The position numbers were made by a program, and so were the translations under genes. Source: Macrostomum lignano (Eukaryota). From it: a DNA stretch of 64,000 nucleotides. The stretch is from NCBI GenBank assembly GCA_002269645.1, contig NIVC01000312.1, positions 124,001 to 188,000 on the forward strand, read 5' to 3'. The notes under the pieces were generated by a model that had not been told where the DNA came from, searched no databases, and saw only the letters and a list, made by a program, of their open reading frames with translations. The stretch's first letter is position 1. Each line of letters opens with the position of its first letter. Shown piece after piece: positions 44,241 through 60,717 of this stretch.

Positions 44241-44424
44241 TCTTCTGGTGTCGTTGCCGCCGTCGCTGCTGCCATTGTCGCTTTTGTGAAGCCTGTGGAT
44301 GCTGCCACGTTGCGGGCGACGGCTGCTGCTGAAAGTTAGCAGACGGAGAGCTCATTAGCACAGAAAATGTGCAATAGAGCCTGCACTGCAACAGAAGCGA
44401 CGTTTTATAAGGTCGACAGTTTAA

Positions 44425-45290
44425 CTGCTAGGGTGCACCTGAGTAACTGCTAGGGTGCACCTGAATAACTGCTAGGGTGCACCTGATTAACTGCTAGGGT
44501 GCACCTGATTAACTGCTAGGGTGCACCTGATTAACTGCTAGGGTGCACCTGATTAACTGCTAGGGTGCACCTGATTAACTGCTAGGGTGCACCTGATTAA
44601 CTGCTAGGGTGCACCTGATTAACTGCTAGGGTGCACCTGATTAACTGCTAGGGTGCACCTGAATAACTGCTAGGGTGCACCTGAATAACTGCTAGGGTGC
44701 ACCTGAATAACTGCTAGGGTGCACCTGAATAACTGCTAGGGTGCACCTGAATAACTGCTAGGGTGCACCTGAATAACTGCTAGGGTGCACCTGAATAACT
44801 GCTAGGGTGCACCTGAGTAACTGCTAGGGTGCACCTGAGTAACTGCTAGGGTGCACCTGAATAACTGCTAGGGTGCACCTGAATAACTGCTAGGGTGCAC
44901 CTGAGTAACTGCTAGGGTGCACCTGAATAACTGCTAGGGTGCACCTGAATAACTGCTAGGGTGCACCTGATTAACTGCTAGGGTGCACCTGAATAACTGC
45001 TAGGGTGCACCTGATTAACTGCTAGGGTGCACCTGAATAACTGCTAGGGTGCACCTGATTAACTGCTAGGGTGCACCTGATTAACTGCTAGGGTGCACCT
45101 GATTAACTGCTAGGGTGCACCTGATTAACTGCTAGGGTGCACCTGATTAACTGCTAGGGTGCACCTGATTAACTGCTAGAGTGCACCTGATTAACTGCTA
45201 GGGTGCACCTGAATAACTGCTAGGGTGCACCGGAGTAACTGCTAGGGTGCACCTGAATAACTGCTAGGGTGCACCTGAAACTTCACCTGA
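44425..45290. repeat. 22-bp minisatellite TAACTGCTAGGGTGCACCTGAW directly upstream of the CNTD1-like gene
   Basis: About 39 units with a palindromic GGTGCACC core. Confidence 0.97.
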
Positions 45291-46069
45291 ATATCAGATA
45301 GGTGGCACCTGAGTAACTTTACAGGAAAAGGATGCCGCATAGGCTAGAACCAGTAAACATAAGTATAAAGCAACACGCAAAAGAATACATGAGTAAAAGT
45401 GCCCACAAACTGCGGGACACAATCAGCTTGAATGTATTTCAGCTTGAACAGAATAAAACTTTTTTCATTGAAATTTTTAGAACCAGTAGTAATGATCAAA
45501 AGAAAAAATTCAGATTTCAGCTGATATATTAATTATGCGACTAGAATACATACTTATTACAGCTAAATATGGATCCTTAATGCCATAAATAATAATACAC
45601 AATAAAGAACTCTGCAAGCATGACATCAGCACATCCCGAATTGGAAGAAATACTTTACAGAGATTAAATAAACAGCATAAACAGTTATATCTGTTATATC
45701 TAAATACAAATCTATGTATTCTAGTTCTAACAAGATCAAATAAAGGTCGTTAGTCCGGTTATCGACTGGGAACACAGGGGTCAGATACTGACAAAAGGCC
45801 TGCCAACTTAAGCTCATAAAGTAGAGTCCCTAATTATCCCCTTGCTTATTCTTCCCTATCCAAAGTACAACTTTCGTCACTTTCTCCACTTTGAGCTTTA
45901 TTTGACAGGCCCTTTATTAACGTAAAAGGGTGTGTCCGTTAGGGGTCAGTTCAAGGTCACAGAGGTCAACTGAAGGTCAAAAGAATGTGTCATTTACTTT
46001 CGTTAAGTCAATGTAATTAACACACGAGGTCATAACCGGACCACCCAAGGTCGCACAGTGCCGAATCTA

Positions 46070-46488: not shown

Positions 46489-49400
46489 TCAGGTGTCCGG
46501 CAGGCCGCTAGACACGCTGCTAGACGGCGTCAGGTGGCAGCTCTCCAACAGGCTGACTAATTCGCGCGGCGTCGGCCCGCCGACGTGACCGGAGAAGCCG
46601 CTGCCGGAGCAACCGCCGCCGGAAGCGGTCGCGGCGATTGTTGCAGCAGCCGCCGTAGCCGCGGTCACGTGACGTTGGGTGGCAACGCCAGCCGAAGCCC
46701 CGGACAAAAGGCAGCTGGGCGGTCGGGCGCCGGCGTCGGAGTTCGGCGGCAGCTGCTCCAACGCGGTGGTCAGATCCCACATCTGCAGACTGCCGTTGGC
46801 GTGGCCGGTGATGAGGTAGCGCCGCGGCCGGGATCCCAGTCGCGAGCTGCAGCCCTCGTATTCGTGAGTGGCAAAGGCGGTGATTGCCGAGCCGTCAACA
46901 GAACGGATTGTGCAGACTCGACGGCCGTTCGGTGCCAGCCGGATGAAGAGGGAACTGGCAGCTGGGAGCACCTGAGATTGGGAGGCGGGTGGGGATAGGG
47001 ATAGCCTCATGGGATACGGAACCAATGGGATATGGAACCAATGGGATACGGAACCAATGGGATACGGAACTAATGGGACACGGAACCAATAGGATACGGA
47101 ACCAATGGAATACGGAACCAATGGGATACGGAACCAATGGGATACGGAACCAATAGGATACGGAACCAATGGGATACGGAACCAATGGGATACGGAACCA
47201 ATGGGATACGGAACCAATGGGATACGGAATCAATGGGATACGGAACCAATAGGATACGGAACAAATGGAATACGGAACCAATGGGATACGGAACCAATGG
47301 GATACGGAATCAATGGGATACGGAACCAATGGGATACGGAACCAATGGGATACGGAATCGATAAAGCCAATCTAAAGAAATCGCACCTGTTGCACAAAGA
47401 TCTGCAGATCGTCTTTTTCGCCGTGCGGCCCCGGATGCCGACCGGGCGAGCAGCTGAAGTGCAACACGTGAAAGCTAGCTAGTGGCGTACTGCCGGGCTG
47501 GGTGCTGATCATGCCGCGAAATCGGGTCACCTGCCAGCTGCGCACGTGACCCAACTCTGAGCAGACGCTGATCAGATGCCGCTCGGATAAGCTGACATGC
47601 TCCACTGGCCGGCGATGAACGCTGAATGTCTGGAATAGCTGAGGCGCGTGACCCGGCGTCTCCGGGTGCTGTACTATGACGCGTACGAGGCCGCTGGCTG
47701 TGCCGTAGGCAATCTCTAGCCATTTGCCGCCAGATAGGGATGTCTTGGGAGTCAGGTAGACGCTGAGCGAGGTGACAGCCTCTTGGCTGGGGTCGCGGTA
47801 TAGTTCTGTCACTAGCAGGTCGTTGTCTTTCAGTCGCATCTAGTTAAAAATAGGTCATTGGTAGATAGAAACAGGAGTGAGTGGGCTGAGTAATCGGGCA
47901 TACTTCAAAGTCGCCAGGGGTCAAAGTCTGGAGAAACATCTAAAGTCACACGGGTCATTGGGTCAAGTAGAGATAAGCCTCCAGCGCCACGCGTGGTTAC
48001 TTCGGGACAAATCTGAAGGTCACGCGGGGTCACTTCGGGACGAATCTGAAGGTCACTCGGAGCCACTTCGGGACGAACATGAAGGTCACTCGGGGCCACT
48101 TCGGGACGAACATGAAGGTCACGCGGGGTCATTTCGGGACGAATCTGAAGGTCACTCGGGGCCACTTCGGGACGAACATGATGGTCACGCGGGGTCACTT
48201 CGGGATGAATCTAAAGGTCACTCGGGGTCAGCTCGGGACGAATCTGAAGGTCACTCGGGGTTACTTCGGGACGAATCTAAAGGTCACTCGAGGTCATTTC
48301 GGGACGAATCTGAAGGTCACTCGGGGTTACTTCGGGACAAAAGGTCACAGTGGTCACGTAGGGCCAGAGCCGCCAGACTCAAGGTCACGCATAGTCACTG
48401 AATTAAAAAACAGTGGGGAATGTGTGAGAGAAACATGCGACTTACAGGCAGTTTCTCCATGTCAATATGACAGATTTGGCCATTGGCGCAGCCTAGCAAC
48501 AAAAACTCGCTACCGGCAACGTCCAGACTGGTTACTGGGGCGCCAATCGCTTGCAATTGCCAGCTGCCTGTGGCGTGGTGCAACACACCAAGTGCACCGG
48601 CTCGCCTGGGTGATGTTGTTCGTGAGGTTCACCATTATAGCCAAGGAAAAACTCTCAAGTACAAAGGAGACTGAATGTCTTAAAAGCATTAAAAAAACGA
48701 AGAGACAAACAATGGTGACTAAGTTTATACCTCAACAATTTAGTGCCTCCCCAGTGGGGGGGCAAGATTGCTAGTCTAATATACTAAAAAATTTCTTAAA
48801 CAAAGTCCAACTTGTAAAACCCCATCGGAGCAAAGATACGTAGGTAATAAAAATAATCGATTTTGAAGCTAGGAAATTGTCAATCTAGTGTTTAACAGCT
48901 CACCTGCTGACAGCTACCAGCTGGTTGCTAACAAACAGCAGGTCATCAACTGGACCGGGGCTTTTCAATTCTCTAGGCGGTGCGGCGCTAACTGCGGCGA
49001 CGGGGGCAGCGGCAGGGTCGGAGCCCGAACCCGTCGTCGTGTCGTCGACGCCGCCACTGCCAACGCCGCCGCCTGCCGCCGTCTCGGGCACGGCGAACAG
49101 CAGGACGCGATGATCGCCGCCGGAGCTAGCCACGCCCAGCAGGCGGTGATCTCGGGCGCTGGCCCCACTGAGACGGCCGCTGAGAGCTAGTCGGTGCACG
49201 CGGTCAGGAAAAGCGCCCGTCTGACTCTGCCACACCGGCTGCCAACCGGCCGCCTCCTTTAACCGGTACAGACGGACAGCGTCGTGGGTGGCCACGGCTA
49301 GCCAGGACTGCTGGCAGCGGATCAGGGTCACCTGCCGGCCAGTGGCAGAAGGAAGTGGAACTTATCAAAGGGCCAATGAGAAGGAAGCCGGAATCGGAAC

Positions 49401-50010
49401 TTATCAAAGGGCCAGTGAGAAGAAGAAGAAGGAAGCGGAACTTATCAAAGGGCCAGTGAGAAGAAGAAGGAAGTGGAACTTATCAAAAAGTCAGTTAGTG
49501 CAGACAAATGTTACTGATAAAAGATGCAATGAAGCTACACACCTCCTGTCCATCAATAGCGCTGATGTGGGCATGAAAATAGACACTGCCGCAGGCGCCA
49601 TAGTAGGCCTCCTCACAGAGGCTCAGCTTCCTAGACAGGCATGTGACTCCATAGAATTCGGCTTCATTTTTCAGTGCCAACCAATCGACATTATCGCTGC
49701 TAGGCAGGTCCCTGGTGCGCAGGTAGTTAAGGATCAGGGAGAATAGCTTGGGATCGCGATCGATAAAGATGGCACCAGTCTCGTCTCGCTGAGTGTCTAG
49801 ACTGCCATTGAGCAAAGCTCGAAAAAATGTGTCTGGGATAGATAACAGAGTCTGCTGCGATGTTGAGAACCTGTTAAGTAAGAATATTGCATTGTCATCA
49901 TATTTCTACAAAAATTAGTAGAAAAAATACTACAAGTTTTAATTTTAATTAGCTTACCTTTTCCCACCAACATTAAAGTTGATTATATCTGATTTAATGC
50001 TATTTGGCAT
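46489..50010 (-). CDS. KCTD3: BTB/POZ plus WD40-repeat protein KCTD3/SHKBP1, 6 exons (50010-49958, 49870-49543, 49331-48904, 48605-48446, 47839-47387, 46971-46489), about 634 aa
   Basis: [99 protein letters not shown]. All junctions are in phase. Confidence 0.95.
47010..47360. repeat. 16-bp minisatellite ATGGGATACGGAACCA in KCTD3 intron 5
   Basis: Directly visible. Confidence 0.96.
47985..48400. repeat. 33-bp minisatellite GAAGGTCACTCGGGGYCACTTCGGGACGAATCT in KCTD3 intron 4
   Basis: The 11-aa periodicity [11 protein letters not shown] equals 33 bp. Confidence 0.94.
49350..49490. repeat. Repeat of about 35-40 bp (GGAACTTATCAAAGGGCCAGTGAG core, 4 copies) in KCTD3 intron 2
   Basis: Directly visible. 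Confidence 0.85.
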
Positions 50011-50544: not shown

Positions 50545-51088
50545 AACTGTAGCAAATTTTAGTATAAATAGAAGCGATTTCAGTGGAGGAGAAGACAACC
50601 TTGCGCATTGCAGTTCACTAACAAAATAGTTGATAACGAATAGTAAGAGTTCCAAGAAAATAAGAATTGAAGAAGTGCTTTCTGTGTTGATTCTTTTTAA
50701 GAAGTGAGAGTGAAATAGACTGAAGAGTATACAGTACTTACATACTATTGAGAAGCAGCAGTATTGAGTAGTAAGAGAATACGAAGCAGATCTGAAGTGA
50801 TACGTGTAAGAATAACCGGAGGCTGTGATCCTCTGATCTTGGTAACGCCCAAGGACTTGCAAAGTACATGGAATACATATACCAGTATAGCCAATAGACC
50901 ACTCAGGCCAAAAGTACAGTGAACACTACTGGAATCAGAATAAACGCTACCAGAATAACAGAGGAGTAAAATCTTTTAGGGCTAATAGTTTTCTAAGAAT
51001 AATACTCAGACTAAATACTCAGACTAAATACGCAGACTAAATTCTCAGACTTATTCTAAAATTAATAAACTCATAATTTATTAATACA
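50545..51088 (+). mobile_element. Possible LTR (left boundary uncertain), ending AATAAA...TAATACA just before a PBS-like TGGTGGCAGC
   Basis: TATAAATA at 50563, TCAGT at 50580, a 13-bp repeat CTCAGACTAAATA x4 at about 51005-51055, AATAAA at 51064, CA at 51087-88 and TGGTGGCAGC at 51096. No partner LTR found in the window. Confidence 0.45.
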
Positions 51089-51412
51089 ATAGTCTTGGTG
51101 GCAGCTACCAACATTTATAAACAGGAGTTTAGCCCTTTGACAACTTAAGTGACAGCTGTGGAATCATTTGTAGGGACAGAAGTTATCCCTAGCACAATTT
51201 TGGTTGCAGCGGTGGGATAATTCTAGAGAGCTAAAAGGCCTGTAACAACTTGGTGTCAGCAGTTGAGATTTAAATAGAGAGAAAAAGAACCACTGTGACA
51301 ACTAGGTGGCATTTAGTGGGATTAAAATTGATAAAGATAGAAGAATACCCATTGCTACAACTTTGGTGTCAGAAGTGGGATCTCATATCGTATAGGAAAA
51401 CCCACTATTACA
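51082..51412 (+). other. Array of six LTR-end/tRNA-Leu PBS-like units with variable spacers
   Basis: PBS-like motifs start at 51096, 51147, 51201, 51251, 51304 and 51364, each preceded by ..ACA plus 3-7 nt. The motif at 51364 is TGGTGTCAGAAGTGGGAT, the complement of the tRNA-Leu(CAA) 3' 18-mer as I recall it. Confidence 0.85.
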
Positions 51413-51539
51413 ATTACATTAGAAATATTTTTTATTTTGGCTATATGTGGCCCTTAAAACCTTTCTATCTAGCCCTTGGGTCCTCTAAAACTTTACAATG
51501 GCAATCTGGCTTACTCAAGGTTTGTCAATTGTGTATCTA

Positions 51540-51745
51540 CTTAGCTCTTTCTCTTCTCTCTCTTTTTTTCTTTGCTCTTCCTTTCTTCTCTTTTATTCTT
51601 TCTCTTTTCTCTATTCTCTTGTTCTTTTCCTTCTCTTTATCTCTCTTTCCTTTATCCCCTCTTTTTCTCTTCCCCTTATCTTCTTTCTTCTCTTTCCTTT
51701 TTCTTTTTTCTTCCCTTTCCCCTTTCATTTCTTTTCTTCTTTCTA
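51540..51745. repeat. Polypyrimidine (T/C) low-complexity tract
   Basis: Directly visible. Confidence 0.9.
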
Positions 51746-52195
51746 CTCATATAAGTTCTAAGCTTTCTATAAAATTCTTTAATAGCCTAGAAGGGTGGCT
51801 ATCTCTTTCACAACTAGGTAAGCATATAGGCTATGGCTAGAGAGGCCAATGACTGCTCTAATTTTTAGGTAAGGATTAACAAATAATAGTCTATAAGAAA
51901 AAATAATAATATATTTATAATAAAAGTCCTACTACTATAACTTTTAGTAACAATAGGCCTAAAACAGGTTTAGAGACTAGCTAAATAACATCAATAATAG
52001 TAAAGGCCTAGTAGGCCTATTATTATAGTATTTTGCAATATAGGCTAAGTTATAATTAAATAGGCCTATAAAGAGCTTTTCAATTCTTTGCAAATGTTTT
52101 TTTTCTTTTATTTATCATAGTTTTTCTTAGGCCTATCTTATTCATTTTATTATTTTGTATTATTCCTTAATATTTTTTATGATATAATATATATT

Positions 52196-52628
52196 GGCGA
52201 TTTTCCTCTTTCGTTCGTTAAATTATTTTTTCGACAGAAACAAGTTGTGACTACTGAGTAATGTCAGAAAACGACAGTAATGGGATGCTGGGACTTAAAT
52301 TTTTCTCGGACAGTTGGATGGAGTTGTTTAACTAAAGACAAACGGTAATGGTAAACGACATGTAACGACAGTAAACAACAACAATAGCTCATGCGAGAGT
52401 GGGAAGGGGAGCAAGGAGCGAGTGCAAGCTGCTGCCTATACTCTGCCATGAACCGAGTAGGTGAGTAGTGCCATAGACATGTGTCAGCAGCAACCCCATG
52501 TCCTTTCCACTACTGCCACATCATTTTTTCAATAGGCATAATTTCAAATGCTGCCACGTCACTTTTTCGCGTCTACGCACCGATTCAAATTGAAAAAATA
52601 ATTTAACGAACGAAAGAGGAAAATCGCC
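52196..52628. mobile_element. MITE of about 433 bp with 37-bp perfect TIRs, in a TA-rich site (Tc1/mariner-like or unclassified)
   Basis: GGCGATTTTCCTCTTTCGTTCGTTAAATTATTTTTTC (52196-52232) is the reverse complement of 52592-52628. Both flanks are ATATAT-like. Confidence 0.88.
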
Positions 52629-53225
52629 TATATATTTCTAGGCTACTCTAAGCAACCTAAAATAATTACTAACTTACTAATACTAGGCTCTAATATAAGG
52701 TAGGCCTAGCATTGAAAATTCAAAGATAGGCTTTATCTCTTATTAATTGGCTCAAACAGTAAAAGGCATCTTGACATCTTTGCATATTTTTTAAGATTGC
52801 ATAGGGCCTAATATAAATAGGGCCTAGGCTTAAGAATAAGAACGAGCTAGTCTGATTGCCTGCTTTAACATAAAATAAACACTACATAAATACGTCATAC
52901 ATAGCTCAGGAATACTGAAGAGATAGCCAAATAAGCGTGGCTAAGTTTGCTAATCAGCTGTAATGTTTAGTCCACTTTGCTTTAATTGATGCCTTGTATA
53001 AACTATTTGAGTTGCAGTTTCAGAATTCAGTTTCAGTTTAGCATAAAATAATGCGCAGCATGCAAACAGCTCCCGCCTGGCGGCGCGAAAGATGGATACA
53101 CGATATTTAACGATACTGCAGTTACTTAAATTGCTGCCAAATGTAGCATCGTCGATAAATCTTATTTAATCGTTTTAAATCTTAAAATGCAACAATAACT
53201 TTTCAAAAAAAACAAAAAAGAAGTT

Positions 53226-53487
53226 GAGGCTCTTCACGGCAATCGATTCCAGAACCAGAATCGGTTCGGATTTCCAAGAAAAAAAGCAGTATAACTTTTT
53301 AACTTTGTTGAATGTTTGACTGCCTTAACAGCCTCACTCTGCACAATTTTTCACTTTCTTCTTGGCTATTGCCATCCAATAATCACAATTTTAAAGCACT
53401 AAAATCCCTCTAGTTTAGGAGACAAAAAGTTATACTTTACAAATTGGTTCTGGTTCTAGAACCAGAACAAGCAATATGAAGAGCCTC
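53226..53487. mobile_element. MITE copy 1 (about 262 bp, TIR GAGGCTCTTCA), PIF/Harbinger-like
   Basis: Terminal inverted repeat plus subterminal CCAGAACCAGAA/TTCTGGTTCT; homologous to copy 2 along its length. Confidence 0.8.
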
Positions 53488-53490
53488 AAT

Positions 53491-53750
53491 GGGCCTTTTC
53501 ATATTACCAATTCCAGAACCAGAATCGGCTCGGAATTCCAAGAAAAACAGCAGTATAACTATTAAACTCTGTTAATATTTGACTGCACTGACAACCTAAC
53601 TTGGCACAATTTTTCACTTTCTCCTTGGCGATTGTCATTCAATAATAAAAACTTTATAGCACGTATCTCCCTCTAGTTATGGAGACAAAAAGTTATACTT
53701 CACAAATTGGTTCTGGTTCTGGAACCAGAGCAAGCAAAATGAAAAGGCCC
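53491..53750. mobile_element. MITE copy 2 (260 bp, 12-bp TIR GGGCCTTTTCAT, 3-bp TSD AAT), PIF/Harbinger-like
   Basis: AAT|GGGCC...GGCCC|AAT. GGGCC-initiated TIRs and a 3-bp TSD are typical of PIF/Harbinger. Confidence 0.85.
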
Positions 53751-53879
53751 AATGGTGCAGTATAAACCGAATGCGTTTTATGTATAGGCTCTTACGTATG
53801 GGTTCATTTTTTAAAAACTTAAATTAATTTCAGCTGATAAATTTAAGCTAGGTATATATAGCTCCTATTTACTAGGGCC

Positions 53880-55290
53880 TATATGCAAGCAGCATGGATC
53901 TTTCTATTATTGGCCACGTAGAGGGGAAGCCCCTTGCGCGCACGCGCTCGCAGAACAACAGGTGGGAGGGACAGGCAGCAGCAGCCTGAGGGGTCCGCGC
54001 AAGCGCTTGCAAGTCAGCGATGAGGCAGTCCGTTAGAGTGGCAGTGCGCGGGCCTGGCCGCGGCGCAATTGCTCGGTCGGCTGGTGCAGCAGCAGGGCCT
54101 GCAGGGCCAGAGGGACGGGCACACCGCGGCCCAGGGTCCGTAGGCATGTGGCCCAACAGCATCTGACGGTGCCGGCGCAGGGTGGCGCTCTGGGGCGGAG
54201 TTCCACCCGGCCATCAGAGCGTTAGTCGACAGGCGCTCCGGGTAGTGCACGCCCAGCGCGTAGCACAGCGGCGATCGGTAGAGCGCGTCCAAGGGCTCGC
54301 TCTCGCGTCTCGGTCAGCGGCACAGGAGGACCGTACGGCCGCGCGGAACAGACACACCTTCAGGTCATCTGTCAAAGACAATCGCATCTCGTTTCATCAC
54401 CAGGGCGCCAAGGTACGGAGTCCTCGCACACCGCGATGCCGTCTCCATTGGCAGCGTGAGAGTTAGATCGGTATTTGTCCCTACATGCAGCGCCTCCGTC
54501 TTGCGAGCGTTCACACAGCAGCCCAACAGGGGCACCCTCGTCGCAAAGCCTCGTCGCAAAGCCTTGCGCGCTGGCGCTGGGAAGTGCTGGATCGTGGCAG
54601 AGCAGCACGCGATGTCGACAGCATACAGTACGTACGAGCCTGGGCTTCCTACCAGTCATCTAGTTGATATAGCTCTCCAGGCAACACTATGGCAGTGGCG
54701 AGTAGGATTTCGCTCACAGCCTCTTTCGATGATCACTTCAGTCCGCTGGGCGTAGATGCGCTGCAGCTCGTCCCTGGCAGCACTGGCCTGGTCGCTGTGA
54801 TGGCCGTGGAGTGCAGCAGTGCTCTGCACATGTCGCCTTGCCTGGGAGACGATGAGATCCGCGCCGGTCCTGCAGGGCCTTCAAATGGTTTTCCTGTCTC
54901 CGTGGGAGAAGCGCTGCAGCATCCTCGACGGCGTGATGGAGAGACTCGAGGACTCTCCATACAGATCAAAGTCGCATGCCACCTCCAGGCGGTGATCAGA
55001 TTGAACGCAGTCGGGGCGGATGTTGAGGACTCTGCGCACCCTGGACCGAGCAGTTGGGCAGAGAATCCAGTCCAGCCGAGTGGCTCGCCCGCCCGTTGGG
55101 GCCAAAAGAAAGTTGGAAGCTTGCTGAAACGTTGTCGCATGGTGCCATTGACAGCCATCAGATCTCTATAGCTGGCCTCGATAAAACTGGATAGGAAAGG
55201 TGAGTTGGCATTGGGGATGCCACAGCTGTTCTTCACAAGGCGGCCGTCGGCTGGCAATCGCGAGTAATGTATAGCAAAATATACCAAAAT
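53880..55290 (-). mobile_element. Degenerate, internally deleted RTE-clade non-LTR retrotransposon (endonuclease C-terminal half plus RT remnants)
   Basis: PNANSPFLSSF, TRLDWIL..SDHRL (APE motifs), VNARKTE, YLG, LKVCLFRAAV, spread across frameshifted ORFs. Confidence 0.8.
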
Positions 55291-56365
55291 AATGTAGAGT
55301 GTCTTTGGCTTTATCTATTTATAAACCTATTTCTATCGATAAGTGCCTTTTTACTCTATCTATTGATAAGCCTCTCACTGTTGGAGAGATTACTTTGAGT
55401 ACTTTCGTCCTTTATTTTTCAACGCACAATGGAACAGTCTCTCTCCGACATGAAGCGCGTTTTGATCTACCAGGATGATGTGTTGGTTTTTGCTGAAAAC
55501 TCTGACTCCTTGCGCAAGTGCTTGCGCGCCGTGAAAACTAGGCTAGCCGAGAAACACGTCACAATCATGAAGCCAAGTGCGTTGAGGAGACCGATGAAAT
55601 TTCTTTTCTGGGTTTCCAAATTTCCGCGGCCATACAACCGACTTGTGGAGAAAATCAGACGCATCGCGGTCCCAGTAGACAAAAAGGAGCTATAGAGCAT
55701 TTCCTTTGGCTTGGTAAATTTTTTCGGCAGGCTCATCCCCAACTTTGCCGGCAAAGCAAAGCCGCTGAACGAGCTACGGCGGGACAACGTCGCATTTGAG
55801 TGGACGGATGCCTGCAATCGAGCGTTTGAAGCACTTAAGCAAGAGTTCACGTCGCAGCCTGCGGTGCAGCCTTATTCCCTGGAGAAGGAGGTCACCATCA
55901 CAACTGACGCCCCCAAAGGTGCCCTTGCTGGTGTAGTGACTCAGAATGGCCACCCTGTAATCTGCATTTTCAGAAGCCTCTCTAAGTCCGAGCAGAATTA
56001 TTCAAACAACGAAAGGGAAGCGCTTGCTAGCCATCATCTGGGCAGTTAGACGACTGAGGCACTATTTACTTGGGAGGCAGTTCACGATCAACACTGAACA
56101 CATCCGCTCGAATTTCTCGGTGGCCATGAAAATGATGGAATTTGACTACCTCATCAACTACATACCTGGCAGAAATATTCCGCACGCAGATCCCTTATCT
56201 CGCTTGCGATTCGATTGTCAACCCACAGGATGTCTCTGACGCAATAAACTGCGTCGCATTCGAGTCCCCGATCATTGACCGCCACCGCATCCTATCAGAG
56301 TTAGAAATTGACACTTTCATTCAAAAAGTCATCAAGCTCGGGACACTGGCCTCAGTGTACACAAT

Positions 56366-57570
56366 GTAGAGATCTCCAAGCATAGTAGCCTACTAAAAGT
56401 AGCAAGATAAAAACATGAATACTATTTAAAACTAACATGCGTCATACTCTATTTTCAGTAATGCATGCAATATCACGTAAACAGCGAGTGATCGTTACAT
56501 AGTCCAAAAACCGGTTTTCAACCTAAATTTCCAAATATGGTAAAGGTCAAGTTAAATGCGATCTAGGCTTCACCCCTTTCTATGTAAAACCCCACCGGTC
56601 AAGAGACAAAGTCCATCTTTTGATTCTTATCAATAAAACCAGTTTGAAGCTCAAGGTCGAATGAAATCGTGTATAAATACAAGCAAAAATCCGAGCTGAA
56701 ACCTCAGACTCGGAGCAGCCTTAAGAGATCTTAGGCTTAGCCAGAGTTACTAAGCAAGGCTATATCTCTGAGAGAGACAAACACCAATTGGTAAGCCTTT
56801 GTTAGAGTCTTTGTTATTTGAAGTCTTTGTTATTCGATTATTGGGAGCTGTGTCATTGCCGGCCGTTACTGATAAGTCGATTTATTGAGTTATTGAATTT
56901 GAGGCCTCCCTATTCCTAAGGGATTGGATAGGATCTGCGGACCGATTCCGATACTCTTAGTCGATTACTGACTGATTGATTTTGGTACCCTAGAGTAACC
57001 GATAGGAGCAAACGACTCAGATTCCGTTATTTCTAGAAGAAGACGCCCTTTCGGAGGACCTCGTTATTGTTATAGAGTTGACTTTGTTATTAGGGCGCAT
57101 CTCTGCACTCGAGGAATATATTGATTTCTGCACTCGAGGAATATATCGATTTCTGCACTCGAGGAATATATTGGTTTCTGCACTCGAGGAATATACTGAC
57201 GTCGACGGACTAAGTTATTAAGCTCTCATATTCGGCCGATTCTATAATTCAAGAAGACTACTCCGGAGGAAGAATATTTGAAGAGACGAGCTCGGAGAAC
57301 CTGCTCGACAAAGAAGAGGAGCCCGCATCAGTAAGTGAACACTGAACTTGTTCCCAGGCTTGAGGTCTGGAAGTGGGAGTTCGTGCGTTTAGACACTAGA
57401 TTAATTTCTCTCTCTCTTCTCTTTCTCTCTCTCTCTTTCCCTCTCTCTCTCTCTCTCTAGTGTGCTAAAGCGAACTCTTCAACAAGCCGAAATGCCGTTC
57501 AAAAAAGTGACTGACTCTGACGGTAGAAGATGGCTTGCTGTTCAAGGTTTTCATTTCAGTCTGTTGTACT
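56366..57570 (+). mobile_element. Unidentified insertion inside the Gypsy pol (promoter-like region, 25-bp repeat x4, GT-AG intron, short ATG ORF)
   Basis: Gypsy homology stops at about 56365. TATAAATA at about 56673, TCTGCACTCGAGGAATATATTGATT repeats at about 57100-57200, donor gtaagt at about 57331, CT tract plus AG at about 57460, then MPFKKVTDSDGRRWLAVQGFHF. Confidence 0.4.
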
Positions 57571-57599
57571 CGTGACTCTCAGGAAGGGTGCACCTACGA

Positions 57600-58050
<451 letters not shown>

Positions 58051-59652
58051 GAGTGCGGCAAACCAAAACAACCACGGGCCGGCAGCCACCCGCCCCGGCC
58101 GCGCCTAAAAAGGCCACGACCCCCCCCCCGGGGCCGGGGGCTCCCCCCCCCGCCCCACCCCCCGCCCCCCCCGGCCCAGCCACCCACCGGCCAATCACGG
58201 CGCAGCTGGGGGAGGACAGCCCGGGAGGAGGGCCAAACAGGGCGGCCCAGCCAACCAGCGCGCAGACAACCCCAAAGGGCTAAGCGGCTAACACCGCTGA
58301 GCCTTTCACACCAAAAACAAATACGGAGCAGAGTGCACTTTAGCAGTGCAAGCGCACGGGCAAAAAAAACATAGTACAAAAACAAATACAGTATGCCGTG
58401 TGGGGGGCAGAGTGAACTTTGGCAGGGCAAGCGCACGGGCACAACAAGTCGCAAGGTTTTCATTCCTCCCAGACTTAGGAAAGAAGCTTTTATGGCAGCT
58501 CATGACACTCACTCAGGATATCTTGCTACGTACAATATCATAATCCTCTCATGCTGGTGGCCATACATGCGCTCAGACATTGAGCAGTTTGTTCACAGTT
58601 GTTCAGCCTGCTGCCTAAAATCAAGAGACAGCTGGCCATCTGCAGAATTCCCATTCCAAAAGCTACAGATGGATTGGGCTTTCGTTAAAGATGTTGGAAA
58701 TATTCTCATTGTAGTAGATTCGTTTTCCGGATGGATTGAGGCGATTCCGTTAAAGACAGATCCACCGAATGTATCATTCGCTCTCTGCATGCGTACTGTC
58801 TTTACGCGTTTTGTAGTGCCGGAGCTGCTAGTATGCCCCCAAATTTACCAGCGATTCTTCTGGCTAAAGATTAGTGGAATAAAAAACCTTGAATCCCCAA
58901 ACTGTCAAAAGTTAAAACTGTGAAACGGGGATTGGACTTGGACCGAACTTGGACCGATTCGGTCCAAAGCTTGGACCTAAAGGATTACTGATGTCGATTT
59001 TGTTCCTTTCCTGCAGCGTGTGCTGTTCCACCAAAGAATATCGTCGCTCCACCGAGGGCGAAGCCCGGCAGAACTCGTGTTTCGTTGTCGGCTCCGTGTT
59101 CCGGTGGAGTCAACGTTCGATCAGGGCGAAAAGGTTGCCTACAGACCAACATCTGACGCCTCAACATCAACCGCATAGTTTCTAATGCTCAAAGGCAGCA
59201 ATACGTCCCGGATTCTGGACAATGACTCTACGCTAGGCCTCTCATGCAGGCGCAAACTTGCCCTGATAGCCGCTAGTGCTGGAGAATTCTGATGACGAGA
59301 GCCTGAATCAGCCACACGATGCACCTGCCAATCAAGCAATTCCAACCCCTGATGGCAGTCCTGGGCCACAAGAGCAAGCTTCTGCGATTGAGGACAGTCC
59401 TGGTGGTACACGCAAAGGCACTCACACTCGACGCCCACCTAAACGATACACTCCGTGACAGCAAAATACCACTGTTGATTATCCTACCATCAACAATCAA
59501 TACGAACTCAGTGTTTGCAGTTTTGACAATATTTCTGTTGATTGCTCCGTTGTGTGCGCCGTGAAATCTACTGCATAAATGTTGCTCTAATATCTATTGC
59601 TTCCATGCAGCTTCCATGCAATTTACAGTATGCCTTTTTCTCAAGGAGGACA

Positions 59653-59874
59653 TGTTAGTGTGTGTTCAAGCCCAAGCATTCTACTATATGCATTCTGTTG
59701 TATTCTACGCTCGTATGTTCCAAATCCCGCGTTGCCAAAGTCCACTTGCTGTAATACCAGCTTCCCCTCGGTTTCAAATAAAAAGCTTTTGCCTGGCTAC
59801 GATGATTAGCCATCTGCGAATAATATACATGAATTAAGTTTCCTGCACAACCAATGCATTCTACGGTCACAACA
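59653..59874 (+). mobile_element. 3' LTR of the Gypsy element (about 222 bp, TGTT...AACA)
   Basis: Purine tract AAGGAGGA just upstream, TGTTAG start, AATAAA inside, ACAACA end. Confidence 0.7.
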
Positions 59875-60717
59875 GGTTCCTTGTGTATATGTCTTAAAAT
59901 CGAGATTATTACCAAAAAGTACTATTTTGATTTCGTATTGAAATCCCACACATTTTTTGTGATTTTGTACTAGCTTGGAGACTTCACTTTCTGCCTTAAA
60001 TATATGCGAATAACATACTTTGCTTTTATTTAATTAAGCAACCCAGTCTTTAGATAACTATTAAAAAGTAAAATATAGTAAAGAAACACTAGATAAAAAG
60101 TTTGTTGATATGTTGATATGTGCTAGGGAGGGCTTCTCTGTTGCGTAAATAATCACACCGCTGTTACCAAGTTGTCGTAGGGGAATTTTAATATTTCCTA
60201 TATACTTATCCCACTGCGCAACCAAGCTGTCCCAGGGTGTTTCGCAAACTTTGCTTATTCAGTTCATTTGTTAGGCAGACAGTCTCGAACCAAAACGGTC
60301 GCCTCTCAATGCGCAGAATTCACTTCTAATTTATACTATAACCGAGGAAGGGCGCATTTAAACAAAGGTTAGAAAACGTGGTCACTAAAAAACGGCGGGA
60401 ATTTAAAATGACCCCTCTCTCAGATATAAATTGTACATTAGAGTGACAGCAAAATACAGCATAAAGACACTGATATACAGCAAAAAAATTCTGAGTTACT
60501 TAGCTCGTACTAGATTCATACTTTTAATTGAGAAATACTAAACTTGTGCTCTTTCTATGCAGTCGATTCTTTTTTAATTAATTTAACTAATGAAGTCCGC
60601 ATTACGTACTTTATCCAGGTAACGTTTCGCGTCGTAAAGTGTTTGTTCTCAAAAAAGATCATAAGAAAATTTTGTTGATATATTCATTCATTGCAACGTA
60701 TCAAAGACTCGCGAATA

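What the first reader, a model, noticed from the sequence alone, without database searches (positions are those of the whole stretch)
51130..51385. Array units have tRNA-mimicking left arms and, read on the minus strand, encode tRNA-Leu 3' fragments ending in CCA
Seen: the left arms (CCCATTGCTACA, CCACTGTGACA, CCCACTATTACA, ATCCCTAGCACA) resemble the tRNA-Leu 3' end itself (ATCCCACTTCTGACA) and can partly pair with the GTGGGAT end of the adjacent PBS, so each unit is a quasi-palindrome. On the minus strand U6 reads ATCCCACTTCTGACACCA, an 18-nt tRF-3-like sequence with a genomically encoded CCA. Established knowledge: 3' tRNA fragments can silence LTR retrotransposons by pairing with the PBS. 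Inference: the array lies about 1.1 kb upstream of the minus-strand KCTD3 ATG, which has an acceptor-like ttttag 13 nt upstream. It could therefore be transcribed in the tRF-sense orientation, either as a source of anti-PBS small RNAs or as PBS-occluding hairpins. An alternative reading is purine tract + TG-nnn-CA micro-LTR (TGTAACA, TGTGACA, TGCTACA) + PBS, a minimal TRIM-like tandem.
Basis: partly seen in the sequence, partly recalled or inferred. Interest (0 to 1): 0.72.

Follow-up and report, generated by a model that had tools for sequence, protein, structure and literature searches.

The report
Tandem retrotransposon primer-site relic
The repeat upstream of the KCTD gene is a decayed piece of a retrotransposon, in which the junction between the element's end and its tRNA-Leu primer-binding site is copied five or six times in a row; nothing shows that it is a small-RNA gene or a tRNA mimic.

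Summary
The array is real. It has five full units of 50-59 bp, plus a possible decayed outer unit and a terminal partial unit, at 51086-51412 (+). Each unit is a variable spacer, a 10-13-nt arm ending in ACA, a 3-4-nt linker, and an 18-nt complement of a tRNA-Leu 3' end including CCA.

Only one unit is perfect: 51364-51381 matches Leu(CAA) 18/18. Unit U2 matches a different isoacceptor, Leu(AAG), 17/18. A single ancestor plus random drift does not explain this (p <= 0.003).

A second, related array lies inverted at 60262-60119. It sits inside a candidate 304-nt TG...CA solo LTR flanked by TATC repeats.

Both arrays end with an arm (...ACA) and no primer site. Metagenome contigs hold arrays built the same way, and one has TGT...ACA ends and a 4-bp target-site duplication.

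The arms match the tRNA 3' end only at background level. Folding is no better than shuffles on the + strand (z -0.59) and marginal on the - strand (z -1.92).

Best reading: a relic of a Leu-primed Ty3/gypsy-type or TRIM-like element with an iterated LTR-end/PBS junction. Transcription and small RNAs cannot be tested here.

The parts
51086..51113 (+). U0, a possible outermost decayed unit: ACA (51086-51088) + 7 nt + TGGTGGCAGC (51096-51105), which is the first 10 nt of a Leu(AAG)-type PBS
   Evidence: Read directly. Matches Leu(AAG) at 10/18. Weak; not recovered by the profile search.
51114..51164 (+). U1: spacer, arm GCCCTTTGACA (51132-51142), linker ACTT, decayed PBS AAGTGACAGCTGTGGAAT (51147-51164)
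   Evidence: Profile hit E 2e-10. PBS matches AAG type 13/18 and CAA type 12/18.
51165..51218 (+). U2: spacer, arm ATCCCTAGCACA (51185-51196), linker ATTT, PBS TGGTTGCAGCGGTGGGAT (51201-51218) = tRNA-Leu(AAG) 17/18
   Evidence: Carries all three AAG-diagnostic bases at positions 6, 10 and 11. Its spacer + arm is the best match to the terminal partial unit V3 of array 2 (z 5.6).
51219..51269 (+). U3: purine-rich spacer, arm CCTGTAACA (51239-51247), linker ACT, PBS-like TGGTGTCAGCAGTTGAGAT (51251-51269). Diagnostic positions are a hybrid (T, C, A), with one inserted base.
   Evidence: (E 8e-8).
51270..51322 (+). U4: spacer with the 14-nt purine run AGAGAGAAAAAGAA, arm CCACTGTGACA (51290-51300), linker ACTA, decayed PBS GGTGGCATTTAGTGGGAT (51305-51322)
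   Evidence: E 4e-8.
51323..51381 (+). U5: spacer, arm CCCATTGCTACA (51348-51359), linker ACTT, perfect 18-nt PBS TGGTGTCAGAAGTGGGAT (51364-51381) = tRNA-Leu(CAA) positions 59-76 including CCA
   Evidence: unique exact match; published probe. Similarity to the tRNA stops after 18 nt, as read. From my own knowledge, that is where plus-strand synthesis on a tRNA primer stops (m1A58).
51382..51412 (+). U6: terminal partial unit. Spacer + arm CCCACTATTACA (51401-51412) ending in ACA. No linker or PBS follows. Proposed LTR 3' end.
   Evidence: Its reverse complement TGTAATAGTGGG resembles the ta-TRIM LTR 5' end TGTAATACGATAGTGG.
60119..60262 (-). Array 2, read on the minus strand.
- V1 (60262-60208): arm CCCTGGGACA, PBS TGGTTGC-GCAGTGGGAT.
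- V2 (60207-60152): arm CCCCTACGACA, linker ACT, PBS TGGTAACAGCGGTGTGAT, 15/18 to AAG type.
- V3 (60151-60119): partial unit ending CCTCCCTAGCACA with no PBS.
   Evidence: Profile hits E 4e-4 and 0.045 with a U-only profile. A two-unit pairwise alignment gives 69.5% over 105 columns. Sequence. V1 shares the T5 variant with U2.
60119..60422 (-). Candidate 304-nt solo LTR containing array 2 in its 3' part. It starts TGAGAGAGGGG and ends ...CCCTAGCACA. It is flanked by TATC (60426-60423) and TATC (60118-60115).
   Evidence: Suggestive only: I estimate the chance of TATCTG falling within 300 nt in this base composition at about 0.1.
55429..59300 (+). Nearby degraded Ty3/gypsy-type pol relic (RT C-terminus, RNase H, integrase H2C2 + rve). 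Context only; not shown to belong to either array.
   Evidence: Pfam hits. No LTR pair or colinear gag/PR links it to array 1.

Best explanation
The array is dead retrotransposon DNA. It is a tandem iteration of one junction: the 3' end of an LTR (arm ending ...ACA, the integrase-recognised end), a 3-4-nt linker, and the 18-nt primer-binding site for tRNA-Leu.

SHOWN:
- The right half of each unit is a tRNA-Leu PBS or its decayed copy.
- Two units carry the imprint of two different Leu isoacceptors.
- The arm + linker + PBS is conserved while the spacers are not.
- A second copy of the module lies elsewhere in the window.
- Both copies end at an arm without a PBS.

INFERRED MECHANISM:
- The array evolved inside an active Leu-primed Ty3/gypsy-type or TRIM-like family, not in place.
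- When an element RNA carries several PBS copies, the tRNA can prime at any of them.
- The copy that is used is rewritten from the tRNA: 18 nt, up to the m1A58 stop. This explains a perfect CAA-type unit beside an AAG-type unit, and a hybrid unit.
- Everything upstream of the used copy becomes part of U5. It is then duplicated into the 3' LTR. Solo or 3' LTRs therefore end in [arm-PBS]n-arm.
- Unit number changes by reverse-transcriptase template switching, by misaligned plus-strand transfer between PBS copies, or by unequal recombination.

The copy in this window is a relic in AT-rich intergenic DNA 1.1 kb upstream of a KCTD gene. No function is indicated.
For: PBS identity:
- 18/18 to tRNA-Leu(CAA) and 17/18 to tRNA-Leu(AAG) against published probe sequences.
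- The two tRNAs differ at 3 of the 18 positions, and U2 has all three AAG states.
- A single-ancestor drift model gives this pattern with p <= 0.003 at 10% divergence and <= 3e-4 at 20%.

The array is real and local.

Uneven conservation:
- Mean pairwise column identity is 0.35 for the spacer, 0.61 for the arm, 0.79 for the linker and 0.61 for the PBS.
- Neutral decay in place would erode all parts equally.

Second array:
- It lies at 60119-60262 (-), with homology confined to the array.
- Its terminal arm matches U2's internal arm (11/11 TCCCTAGCACA; z 5.6). The same ...ACA is an end in one copy and an LTR-end/PBS junction in the other.
- Candidate TG...CA LTR with a TATC TSD around array 2.

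Known relatives:
- Flatworm ta-TRIM and lennie/Saci2 elements have a tRNA-Leu PBS a few nt after LTR ...CA and 4-bp TSDs.
- ta-TRIM copies read ...GCTACA T TGGTGGCAGCGG.

Same architecture elsewhere:
- L004, L008 and L012 have about 62-bp units of the form ...GTTACA AATT TGGTGGCAGCGGTGGGAT.
- Two of these arrays end in ...GTTACA without a PBS.
- L008 starts TGTAACGG, ends CCGTTACA, and is flanked by GCAT/GCAT.
- In L013, perfect CAA-type and AAG-type PBSs sit in adjacent units.
- Between loci, junction + PBS is 99% identical against 68% for the upstream 37 nt.

A Ty3/gypsy pol relic lies nearby.
Against: - No paired LTRs, gag/PR remnant, TG start or TSD could be found for array 1.
- The TSD around array 2 could be chance (about 0.1).
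- The source genome's own tRNA-Leu genes were not available (no tRNA gene in the window), so isoacceptor assignment rests on mouse sequences and on conservation.
- The priming-at-alternative-PBS mechanism is an inference; nothing here observes it.
- Decay of PBS copies is not strictly graded from outer to inner units (U2 17/18 but U4 about 10/18).
- The closest pol relative recovered (L001) uses a different PBS and has no such array.
- The external arrays come from unidentified organisms and are analogues, not demonstrated relatives.
Confidence: 0.68

Rival explanations
1. Ultra-miniature TRIM-like tandem. Each about 54-bp unit would be a complete mini-element cycle: PBS, short spacer, polypurine tract, then an LTR collapsed to its two integrase ends (TGTAACA, TGTGACA, TGCTACA), then the linker. 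The array would be LTR-int-LTR-int, as in tandem TRIMs, and would be mobilised in trans by a Leu-primed gypsy element.
For: - The unit grammar fits. Purine runs (for example AGAGAGAAAAAGAA) lie 2-7 nt before T(G/A)nnACA, and the PBS follows 3-4 nt later.
- ta-TRIM has its PPT 3 nt before the LTR, and its PBS 1 nt after it if the CCA complement is counted (4 as the authors count).
- Tandem TRIMs are known in plants, bivalves and taeniid cestodes.
- L019 is a 29-bp-period array of C-TGTGACA-CAT + PBS. L010 has TGTACA + AGT + PBS. L008 has a 48-nt TGT...ACA palindromic start and a TSD.
Against: - Only 4 of 9 units have TG at the right place; the others have TA or TT.
- A 7-bp LTR has no promoter, and its R region would be only about 4 nt.
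- The external arrays mostly lack purine tracts, so a PPT is not a shared feature.
- The TG..CA and purine features are shared among the units by descent, so they do not count as independent support.
- Units are 5-6 times smaller than the smallest described TRIM, which is 292 bp with 82-bp LTRs. The 292 bp is from the abstract; the 82 bp is from my own knowledge.
Confidence: 0.15
2. Ordinary minisatellite. A single LTR-end/PBS junction left by one old insertion was duplicated in place by replication slippage or unequal crossing-over in a genome that makes minisatellites everywhere. The copies then drifted.
For: - The window is full of tandem arrays of many periods.
- The units are head-to-tail with a similar length.
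- No element ends were found for array 1.
Against: - Drift from one ancestor does not give one 18/18 CAA-type and one 17/18 AAG-type PBS (p <= 0.003).
- Spacers are at near-random identity while arm, linker and PBS are conserved.
- A second array with the same unit order and the same kind of end lies 8.7 kb away, with no flanking homology.
- Arrays of the same build recur in unrelated contigs, one with a TSD.
Confidence: 0.08
3. Functional small-RNA or decoy locus. Minus-strand transcription from the KCTD promoter region would yield tRF-3-like RNAs with encoded CCA that silence Leu-primed retrotransposons. Alternatively, plus-strand transcripts would act as PBS hairpins or sponges for tRNA-Leu or tRFs, or would nucleate heterochromatin through PBS/pre-tRNA pairing.
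For: - One perfect 18-nt tRF-3-like sequence is present.
- The minus strand folds marginally better than shuffles (z -1.92, 7/200).
- That 3' tRFs target PBSs is established knowledge recalled from memory, not read here. PBS/pre-tRNA/Puf68 recruitment of Su(var)3-9 is reported in Drosophila (PMC13537249).
Against: - Only one of about seven units could give an RNA identical to the tRNA fragment, and such an RNA would be indistinguishable from the abundant genuine tRF.
- The + strand folds no better than shuffles, and single-unit hairpins are weak.
- The arm/tRNA mimicry is at background.
- The sister array has the opposite orientation and no gene relation.
- No RNA family matches.
- No expression data are available.
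Confidence: 0.04
4. The two inverted arrays are the terminal inverted repeats of one large foldback-like composite transposon spanning about 51.09-60.26 kb.
For: - The arrays are inverted relative to each other.
- Homology is confined to the arrays.
- Both have the partial unit on the inner side.
Against: - No TSD was found at the outer ends.
- Array 2 sits inside its own candidate TG...CA unit with a TATC TSD on both of its sides. That makes it a separate insertion.
- A PBS with a tRNA imprint is a retro-element feature, not a TIR feature.
Confidence: 0.03

Closest known systems
Primer-binding site of Leu-primed Ty3/gypsy elements and their TRIMs in flatworms (lennie/Saci2-like elements and ta-TRIM; PMC4558846, PMC12471100)
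   Same: - Complementarity to the tRNA-Leu 3' end.
- PBS a few nt after an LTR ending ...ACA. ta-TRIM reads GCTACA-T-TGGTGGCAGCGG; window U5 reads GCTACA-ACTT-TGGTGTCAGAAGTGGGAT.
- LTR 5' end TGTAAT..., like the reverse complement of the U6 arm.
- 4-bp TSD, as in the candidate around array 2.
   Different: - Those elements have one PBS per element, LTRs of about 200 bp and an internal region.
- Here the junction is iterated 5-6 times with a 50-59-bp period.
- No internal region or LTR pair is present.
- No sequence homology to those families was shown beyond the junction motif.
Tandemly arranged TRIMs / Cassandra arrays (LTR-internal-LTR-internal...; PMC7215508, PMC6934838)
   Same: - Head-to-tail alternation of an LTR-like piece and a PBS-bearing piece.
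- The array ends with the LTR-like piece.
- Solo copies occur.
   Different: - Known units are hundreds of bp, with real LTRs of about 80-250 bp and a PPT.
- Here the whole unit is about 54 bp, and the 'LTR' part is at most 30-40 nt with no promoter.
tRF-3 / PBS antagonism (recalled from memory as Schorn et al. 2017; not read here) and the PBS/pre-tRNA/Puf68 heterochromatin pathway (PMC13537249)
   Same: The 18-nt sequence is exactly the target or mimic of a 3' tRF from tRNA-Leu(CAA).
   Different: Those systems act on PBSs of transcribed elements through genuine tRNA products. Nothing here shows transcription, processing or chromatin marks, and most units are mutated.
Ginger1 DNA transposons (gypsy-type integrase, TGT...ACA inverted ends, 4-bp TSD) - from my own knowledge
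   Same: The metagenome analogue L008 has 20-nt perfect inverted TGTAACGG.../...CCGTTACA ends and a 4-bp TSD.
   Different: - As far as I know, Ginger elements carry no tRNA PBS.
- The window arrays show no inverted ends.

Membership tests
LTR-retrotransposon primer-binding site | 8-18 nt complementary to the 3' end of a cellular tRNA, including CCA | tested here: met
   U5 matches Leu(CAA) 18/18 and U2 matches Leu(AAG) 17/18, against published probes. The organism's own tRNA genes were not available.
LTR-retrotransposon primer-binding site | Lies 0-5 nt downstream of an LTR that ends in CA | tested here: inconclusive
   Every PBS copy follows ...ACA + 3-4 nt. An LTR upstream is only a candidate for array 2 and was not found for array 1.
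LTR retrotransposon / TRIM (complete element) | Two direct LTRs (TG...CA) flanking an internal region with PBS and PPT, bounded by a TSD | tested here: not met
   No direct repeat pair lies around either array. No gag/PR lies downstream. The only candidate is a solo LTR with a TATC TSD around array 2.
TRIM (size class) | Terminal repeats of about 80-250 bp, element under 1 kb | tested here: not met
   Units are 50-59 bp, and the LTR-like part is at most 37 nt.
tRNA gene or tRNA-derived SINE | Cloverleaf with internal A and B boxes | tested here: not met
   ARAGORN finds 0 genes and Rfam finds no tRNA hit. Similarity to the tRNA is limited to 18 nt and includes CCA, which (from my own knowledge) eukaryotic tRNA genes do not encode.
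Hairpin small-RNA precursor / structured RNA | Folding free energy clearly below that of shuffled controls | tested here: not met
   + strand z = -0.59 and - strand z = -1.92. Single units range from -2.5 to +1.3.
Small-RNA-producing locus | Transcription and reads carrying unit-specific variants | not testable with these tools
   No expression data are available.
Simple minisatellite formed in place | Units related by uniform neutral divergence from one ancestor, at one locus | tested here: not met
   Conservation is uneven, two tRNA imprints are present, and a second locus exists.
Foldback-type transposon | Inverted terminal arrays at the ends of one insertion, with a TSD outside | tested here: inconclusive
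   Inverted arrays are present. No outer TSD was found. Array 2 has its own candidate TSD on both of its sides.

The most novel reading that the evidence does not exclude
The window arrays would belong to an undescribed class of ultra-small retroelement modules. These would be tandem [mini-LTR end - linker - tRNA-Leu PBS] repeats of 29-62 bp that are copied and integrated by gypsy-type RT/integrase. Each PBS copy would be rewritten by whichever Leu isoacceptor primed it, and the LTR would grow by capturing used PBS copies. Such arrays occur in several unrelated eukaryotic contigs, one bounded by TGT...ACA ends and a 4-bp TSD. When transcribed, they could also act as multi-site sinks or targets for tRNA-Leu, 3' tRFs or pre-tRNA-guided silencing.
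Probability: 0.25. Interest if true: 0.7.

Novelty: new variant of a known kind. Interest (0 to 1): 0.42.

Why it matters
For this locus, a proposed regulatory small-RNA source is reclassified as a transposon relic. Annotation of the KCTD upstream region should treat it as repeat DNA.

More widely, the arrangement is unusual. Primer-binding sites normally occur once per element. Here, and in a dozen metagenome contigs, the LTR-end/PBS junction is iterated, and neighbouring copies match different tRNA-Leu isoacceptors.

If this is a regular product of reverse transcription, it records primer choice and strand-transfer errors in wild elements. It would also offer a route by which LTRs grow and by which satellites are born from retroelements. 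In addition, PBS arrays would be natural multi-site targets for tRF- or pre-tRNA-based silencing.

I found no description of such arrays in the searched literature. That search was limited.

Tried and rejected
- Tandem Repeats Finder at minimum score 30 does not report the array.
- blastn with word size 9 finds no copy elsewhere in the window. Only the profile search and the word-7 search found array 2.
- Search for LTR pairs in 44-64 kb, and between the region upstream of array 1 and the region downstream of the integrase relic: none.
- A 26-nt, 85% match between 50557-50581 and the candidate LTR around array 2 is too weak to use.
- Three-frame reading of 51383-55500 (+) and 56000-60110 (-) for gag/protease downstream of the arrays: nothing recognisable by eye. 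These stretches were not scanned against Pfam.
- Relatives of the pol relic: about 52% identity at best. L001 is a 4.2-kb gypsy element with 152-bp LTRs and a non-Leu PBS. L002 was not informative.
- KCTD homologues reach at most 58% identity. No orthologous locus could therefore be fetched, and the source organism stays unidentified.
- TSD + TG search for array 1, with two possible end positions and 4-5-bp TSDs: none.
- Supplement of the Saci2 paper searched for Leu PBS strings: none held as text.
- A literature search on 'PBS duplication' terms was swamped by phosphate-buffered saline. Searches for the 18-mers returned only tRNA and miRNA papers.
- Four of the 17 metagenome hits (L006, L011, L015, L018) are GC-rich, bacterial-looking contigs with a tRNA gene and a duplicated 3' end. 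I set them aside as unrelated.
Full report
**What is in the sequence**

Reading 50700-51900 and aligning the units shows a head-to-tail series on the + strand:

| Unit | Coordinates | Note |
|---|---|---|
| U0 | 51086-51113 | doubtful, decayed |
| U1 | 51114-51164 | full unit |
| U2 | 51165-51218 | full unit |
| U3 | 51219-51269 | full unit |
| U4 | 51270-51322 | full unit |
| U5 | 51323-51381 | full unit |
| U6 | 51382-51412 | final partial unit |

A full unit has four parts:
- a variable, purine-rich spacer of about 20-25 nt;
- an arm of 10-13 nt ending in ACA;
- a linker (ACTT, ATTT, ACT or ACTA);
- an 18-19-nt stretch resembling TGGTG.CAG..GTGGGAT.

U6 has the spacer and the arm (CCCACTATTACA) but no linker or 18-mer.

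**Is it more than chance?**

Tandem Repeats Finder misses the array, and a word-9 blastn finds nothing. More sensitive tests show it is real:
- A Smith-Waterman scan of the U5 core against both strands of the window puts the three best non-self hits all within the 250 bp just upstream, on the same strand (score 32; best background 26).
- A profile built from the units scores each at E 1e-10 to 8e-8.

**Identity of the right halves**

The 18-mer at 51364-51381 is unique in the window. It equals the first 18 nt of a published antisense probe for mouse tRNA-Leu(CAA), TGGTGTCAGAAGTGGGATTCGAACC... (PMC7997516). The same paper gives the tRNA-Leu(AAG) probe as TGGTGGCAGCGGTGGGATTCG....

- U2 (TGGTTGCAGCGGTGGGAT) matches the AAG probe at 17/18 and the CAA probe at 14/18. 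It carries all three bases that distinguish the two tRNAs.
- U3 is a hybrid at those positions.
- U1, U4 and U0 are more decayed.
- In every unit the similarity to the tRNA stops after 18 nt. The match includes the complement of CCA.

Both properties are what a retroelement primer-binding site shows. From my own knowledge, plus-strand strong-stop DNA copies the primer only up to m1A58, and eukaryotic tRNA genes do not encode CCA. ARAGORN and Rfam find no tRNA or other RNA family.

A simulation tested seven units drifting from one ancestor. It produced one 18/18 CAA unit together with one unit at 17/18 or better to AAG with probability 0.003 or less at 10% divergence. At 20% the probability was 3e-4 or less. 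At least two separate tRNA imprints therefore lie in the ancestry of this array.

- *Arm/tRNA mimicry.* Scanning the sense tRNA end ATCCCACTTCTGACA over the window, only U4's arm reaches score 14. About 2.5% of all windows reach that score, and the other arms score lower. The claimed mimicry is at background.
- *Whole-array folding.* The 300-nt array gives z = -0.59 on the + strand and z = -1.92 on the - strand (7 of 200 shuffles fold as well).
- *Single units.* Individual units give weak 5-6-bp stems in three of five cases.
- *Gene geometry.* This is correct. The ATG is at 50010-50008 on the minus strand, 'ttttag' lies 13 nt upstream, and the first exon encodes the start of a BTB/KCTD protein.

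**A second array**

The unit profile also hits the minus strand at 60153-60187 and 60208-60242. Read on that strand there are two full units, V1 and V2, and a terminal partial unit V3 ending CCTCCCTAGCACA, again without a PBS.

- A pairwise alignment spans two units at 69.5% identity.
- Homology does not extend beyond the arrays on either side.
- V1 shares U2's T at PBS position 5, so these copies are related by descent.
- V3's spacer + arm is the best match to U2's (z 5.6; 11/11 in TCCCTAGCACA). The ...ACA that ends array 2 therefore corresponds to an internal ...ACA|ATTT|PBS junction in array 1.

Around array 2 there is a candidate solo LTR on the minus strand, 60422 to 60119. It is 304 nt, starts TG and ends CA. 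It is flanked by TATC on both sides. The chance of this is roughly 0.1, so it is only suggestive. No such boundary was found for array 1.

**Pattern of conservation**

Across the seven full units, mean pairwise column identity differs by part:

| Part | Mean pairwise identity |
|---|---|
| Spacer | 0.35 |
| Arm | 0.61 |
| Linker | 0.79 |
| PBS | 0.61 |

Decay in place after a simple duplication would erode all parts alike. The pattern fits long evolution under constraint on the arm-linker-PBS junction, that is, inside an active element family.

**Context in known elements**

- Flatworm ta-TRIM and its proposed partner lennie (Saci2-like gypsy elements) use a tRNA-Leu PBS a few nt after an LTR ending in CA. 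They have a PPT 3 nt before the 3' LTR and make 4-bp TSDs (PMC4558846).
- Saci2 families in tapeworms use tRNA-Leu(AAG) among others (PMC12471100).
- ta-TRIM copies read ...GGGACGCTACA-T-TGGTGGCAGCGG..., and their LTRs begin TGTAATACGATAGTGG. Compare U5's ...GCTACA-ACTT-TGG and the reverse complement of U6's arm, TGTAATAGTGGG.
- Tandem TRIM arrays and solo repeats are known in plants, bivalves and taeniid cestodes (PMC6934838).
- A degraded gypsy-type pol (RT/RNase H, integrase) lies at 55.4-59.3 kb on the + strand. No LTR pair or colinear gag ties it to either array. Its nearest database relative uses another PBS.

**Same architecture elsewhere**

I scanned the metagenome contigs for two Leu-type 18-mers 25-50 nt apart. 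This returned 17 loci. Four look like bacterial tRNA genes with a duplicated 3' end, and I set them aside. The rest are eukaryote-like tandem arrays.

- *L004, L008, L012.* Units are about 62 bp, of the form ...GGTCCGTTACA-AATT-TGGTGGCAGCGGTGGGAT. Homology among the three loci is confined to the arrays. Junction + PBS is 99% identical between loci, against 68% for the 37 nt upstream.
- *Array ends.* L004 and L008 end with ...GTTACA and no PBS, like U6 and V3.
- *L008.* It begins with TGTAACGG..., the inverse of its end, and is flanked by GCAT on both sides. This is the signature of an integrase-made insertion.
- *L013.* A perfect Leu(CAA) PBS and a perfect Leu(AAG) PBS sit in adjacent units whose spacers differ. 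This is the same two-isoacceptor situation as in the window.
- *L019 and L010.* They have 29- and 36-bp periods built from TGTGACA or TGTACA plus a PBS.
- *L003, L007, L014.* Their units extend past 18 nt into the T arm.

**Interpretation**

*Shown:*
- The units are iterated LTR-end/linker/PBS(tRNA-Leu) junctions.
- The module is dispersed in this genome.
- It carries two tRNA imprints.
- It ends at an LTR-type ...ACA.

*Inferred:*
- The array arose within a Leu-primed gypsy or TRIM-like family.
- Priming at any one of several PBS copies rewrites that copy from the tRNA. It also places all upstream copies in U5, and hence in the 3' and solo LTRs.
- Template switching or unequal recombination changes the number of units.

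Simple slippage in place, a foldback transposon and a functional small-RNA or decoy locus are each less well supported.

Nothing here bears on transcription. A recent Drosophila study shows that PBS/pre-tRNA pairing can recruit H3K9 methylation (PMC13537249). A silencing side-effect of a transcribed PBS array is therefore conceivable, but it is untested.

**Verdict**

The feature is a retrotransposon relic of an unusual, apparently undescribed tandem form. It is a new variant of a known kind and of moderate interest.

Noticed in passing
window 60119-60262 (minus strand); candidate LTR 60119-60422: A second array of the same LTR-end/PBS units lies in inverted orientation 8.7 kb from the first. 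It sits inside a candidate 304-nt TG...CA solo LTR flanked by TATC/TATC.
   Followed up: yes
window 55429-59300 (+): A degraded Ty3/gypsy-type pol. It includes the RT C-terminus (YQDD), RNase H, and the integrase zinc-binding and core domains, with stops and frameshifts. The RT N-terminus, protease and gag were not seen.
   Followed up: partly
window 52189-52232 and 52592-52635: A 44-nt inverted repeat, 98% complementary, with arms 359 nt apart. It looks like a MITE or a long hairpin.
   Followed up: no
window 53246-53755: A 263-bp unit repeated 1.9 times at 85% identity.
   Followed up: no
window 51001-51051 and 51540-51750: A 13-bp repeat, AATACTCAGACTA x3.9, lies directly upstream of the array. 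A 200-bp CT-rich low-complexity tract lies downstream. After that tract there is a further weak unit-like fragment, CTTTCACAACTAGGT, at 51805-51819.
   Followed up: partly
window 49347-49487: A 39-41-bp minisatellite (3.6 copies) lies just past the second KCTD exon, apparently in an intron.
   Followed up: no
window 15788-~18000; 22091-~24000; 44421-45318; 46500-48800: Very long arrays are present with 8/12-nt, 14-nt and 22-nt periods. GC skew reaches 0.93 at 22-24 kb. Open frames around 46.5-48.8 kb consist of repeated peptide motifs on both strands. The genome is unusually rich in minisatellites.
   Followed up: no
L013 755-829 (+): On a metagenome contig, adjacent units carry a perfect tRNA-Leu(CAA) PBS and a perfect tRNA-Leu(AAG) PBS. 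Each follows ...ACA plus a short A/T linker.
   Followed up: partly
L008 4516-4875 (minus strand): A 360-bp element made only of five [AATT + Leu(AAG) PBS + 40-nt spacer ending GTTACA] units. It starts with a 48-nt TGTAACGG...CCGTTACA palindrome and is flanked by a GCAT target-site duplication.
   Followed up: partly
L009, L017, L016, L005 (metagenome contigs): Arrays with 17-30-bp periods consist almost entirely of the Leu PBS 17/18-mer itself, repeated head to tail.
   Followed up: no
L003, L007, L014: Tandem units extend the tRNA-Leu antisense copy past 18 nt into the T arm (GGGATTTGAACCCA...). This is a tRNA-3'-half type of repeat, distinct from the 18-nt-limited PBS type.
   Followed up: no
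L006, L011, L015, L018: GC-rich, bacterial-looking contigs with a tRNA gene preceded by a duplicate of its 3' end. This is the usual footprint of an element integrated into a tRNA gene and is unrelated to the finding.
   Followed up: no
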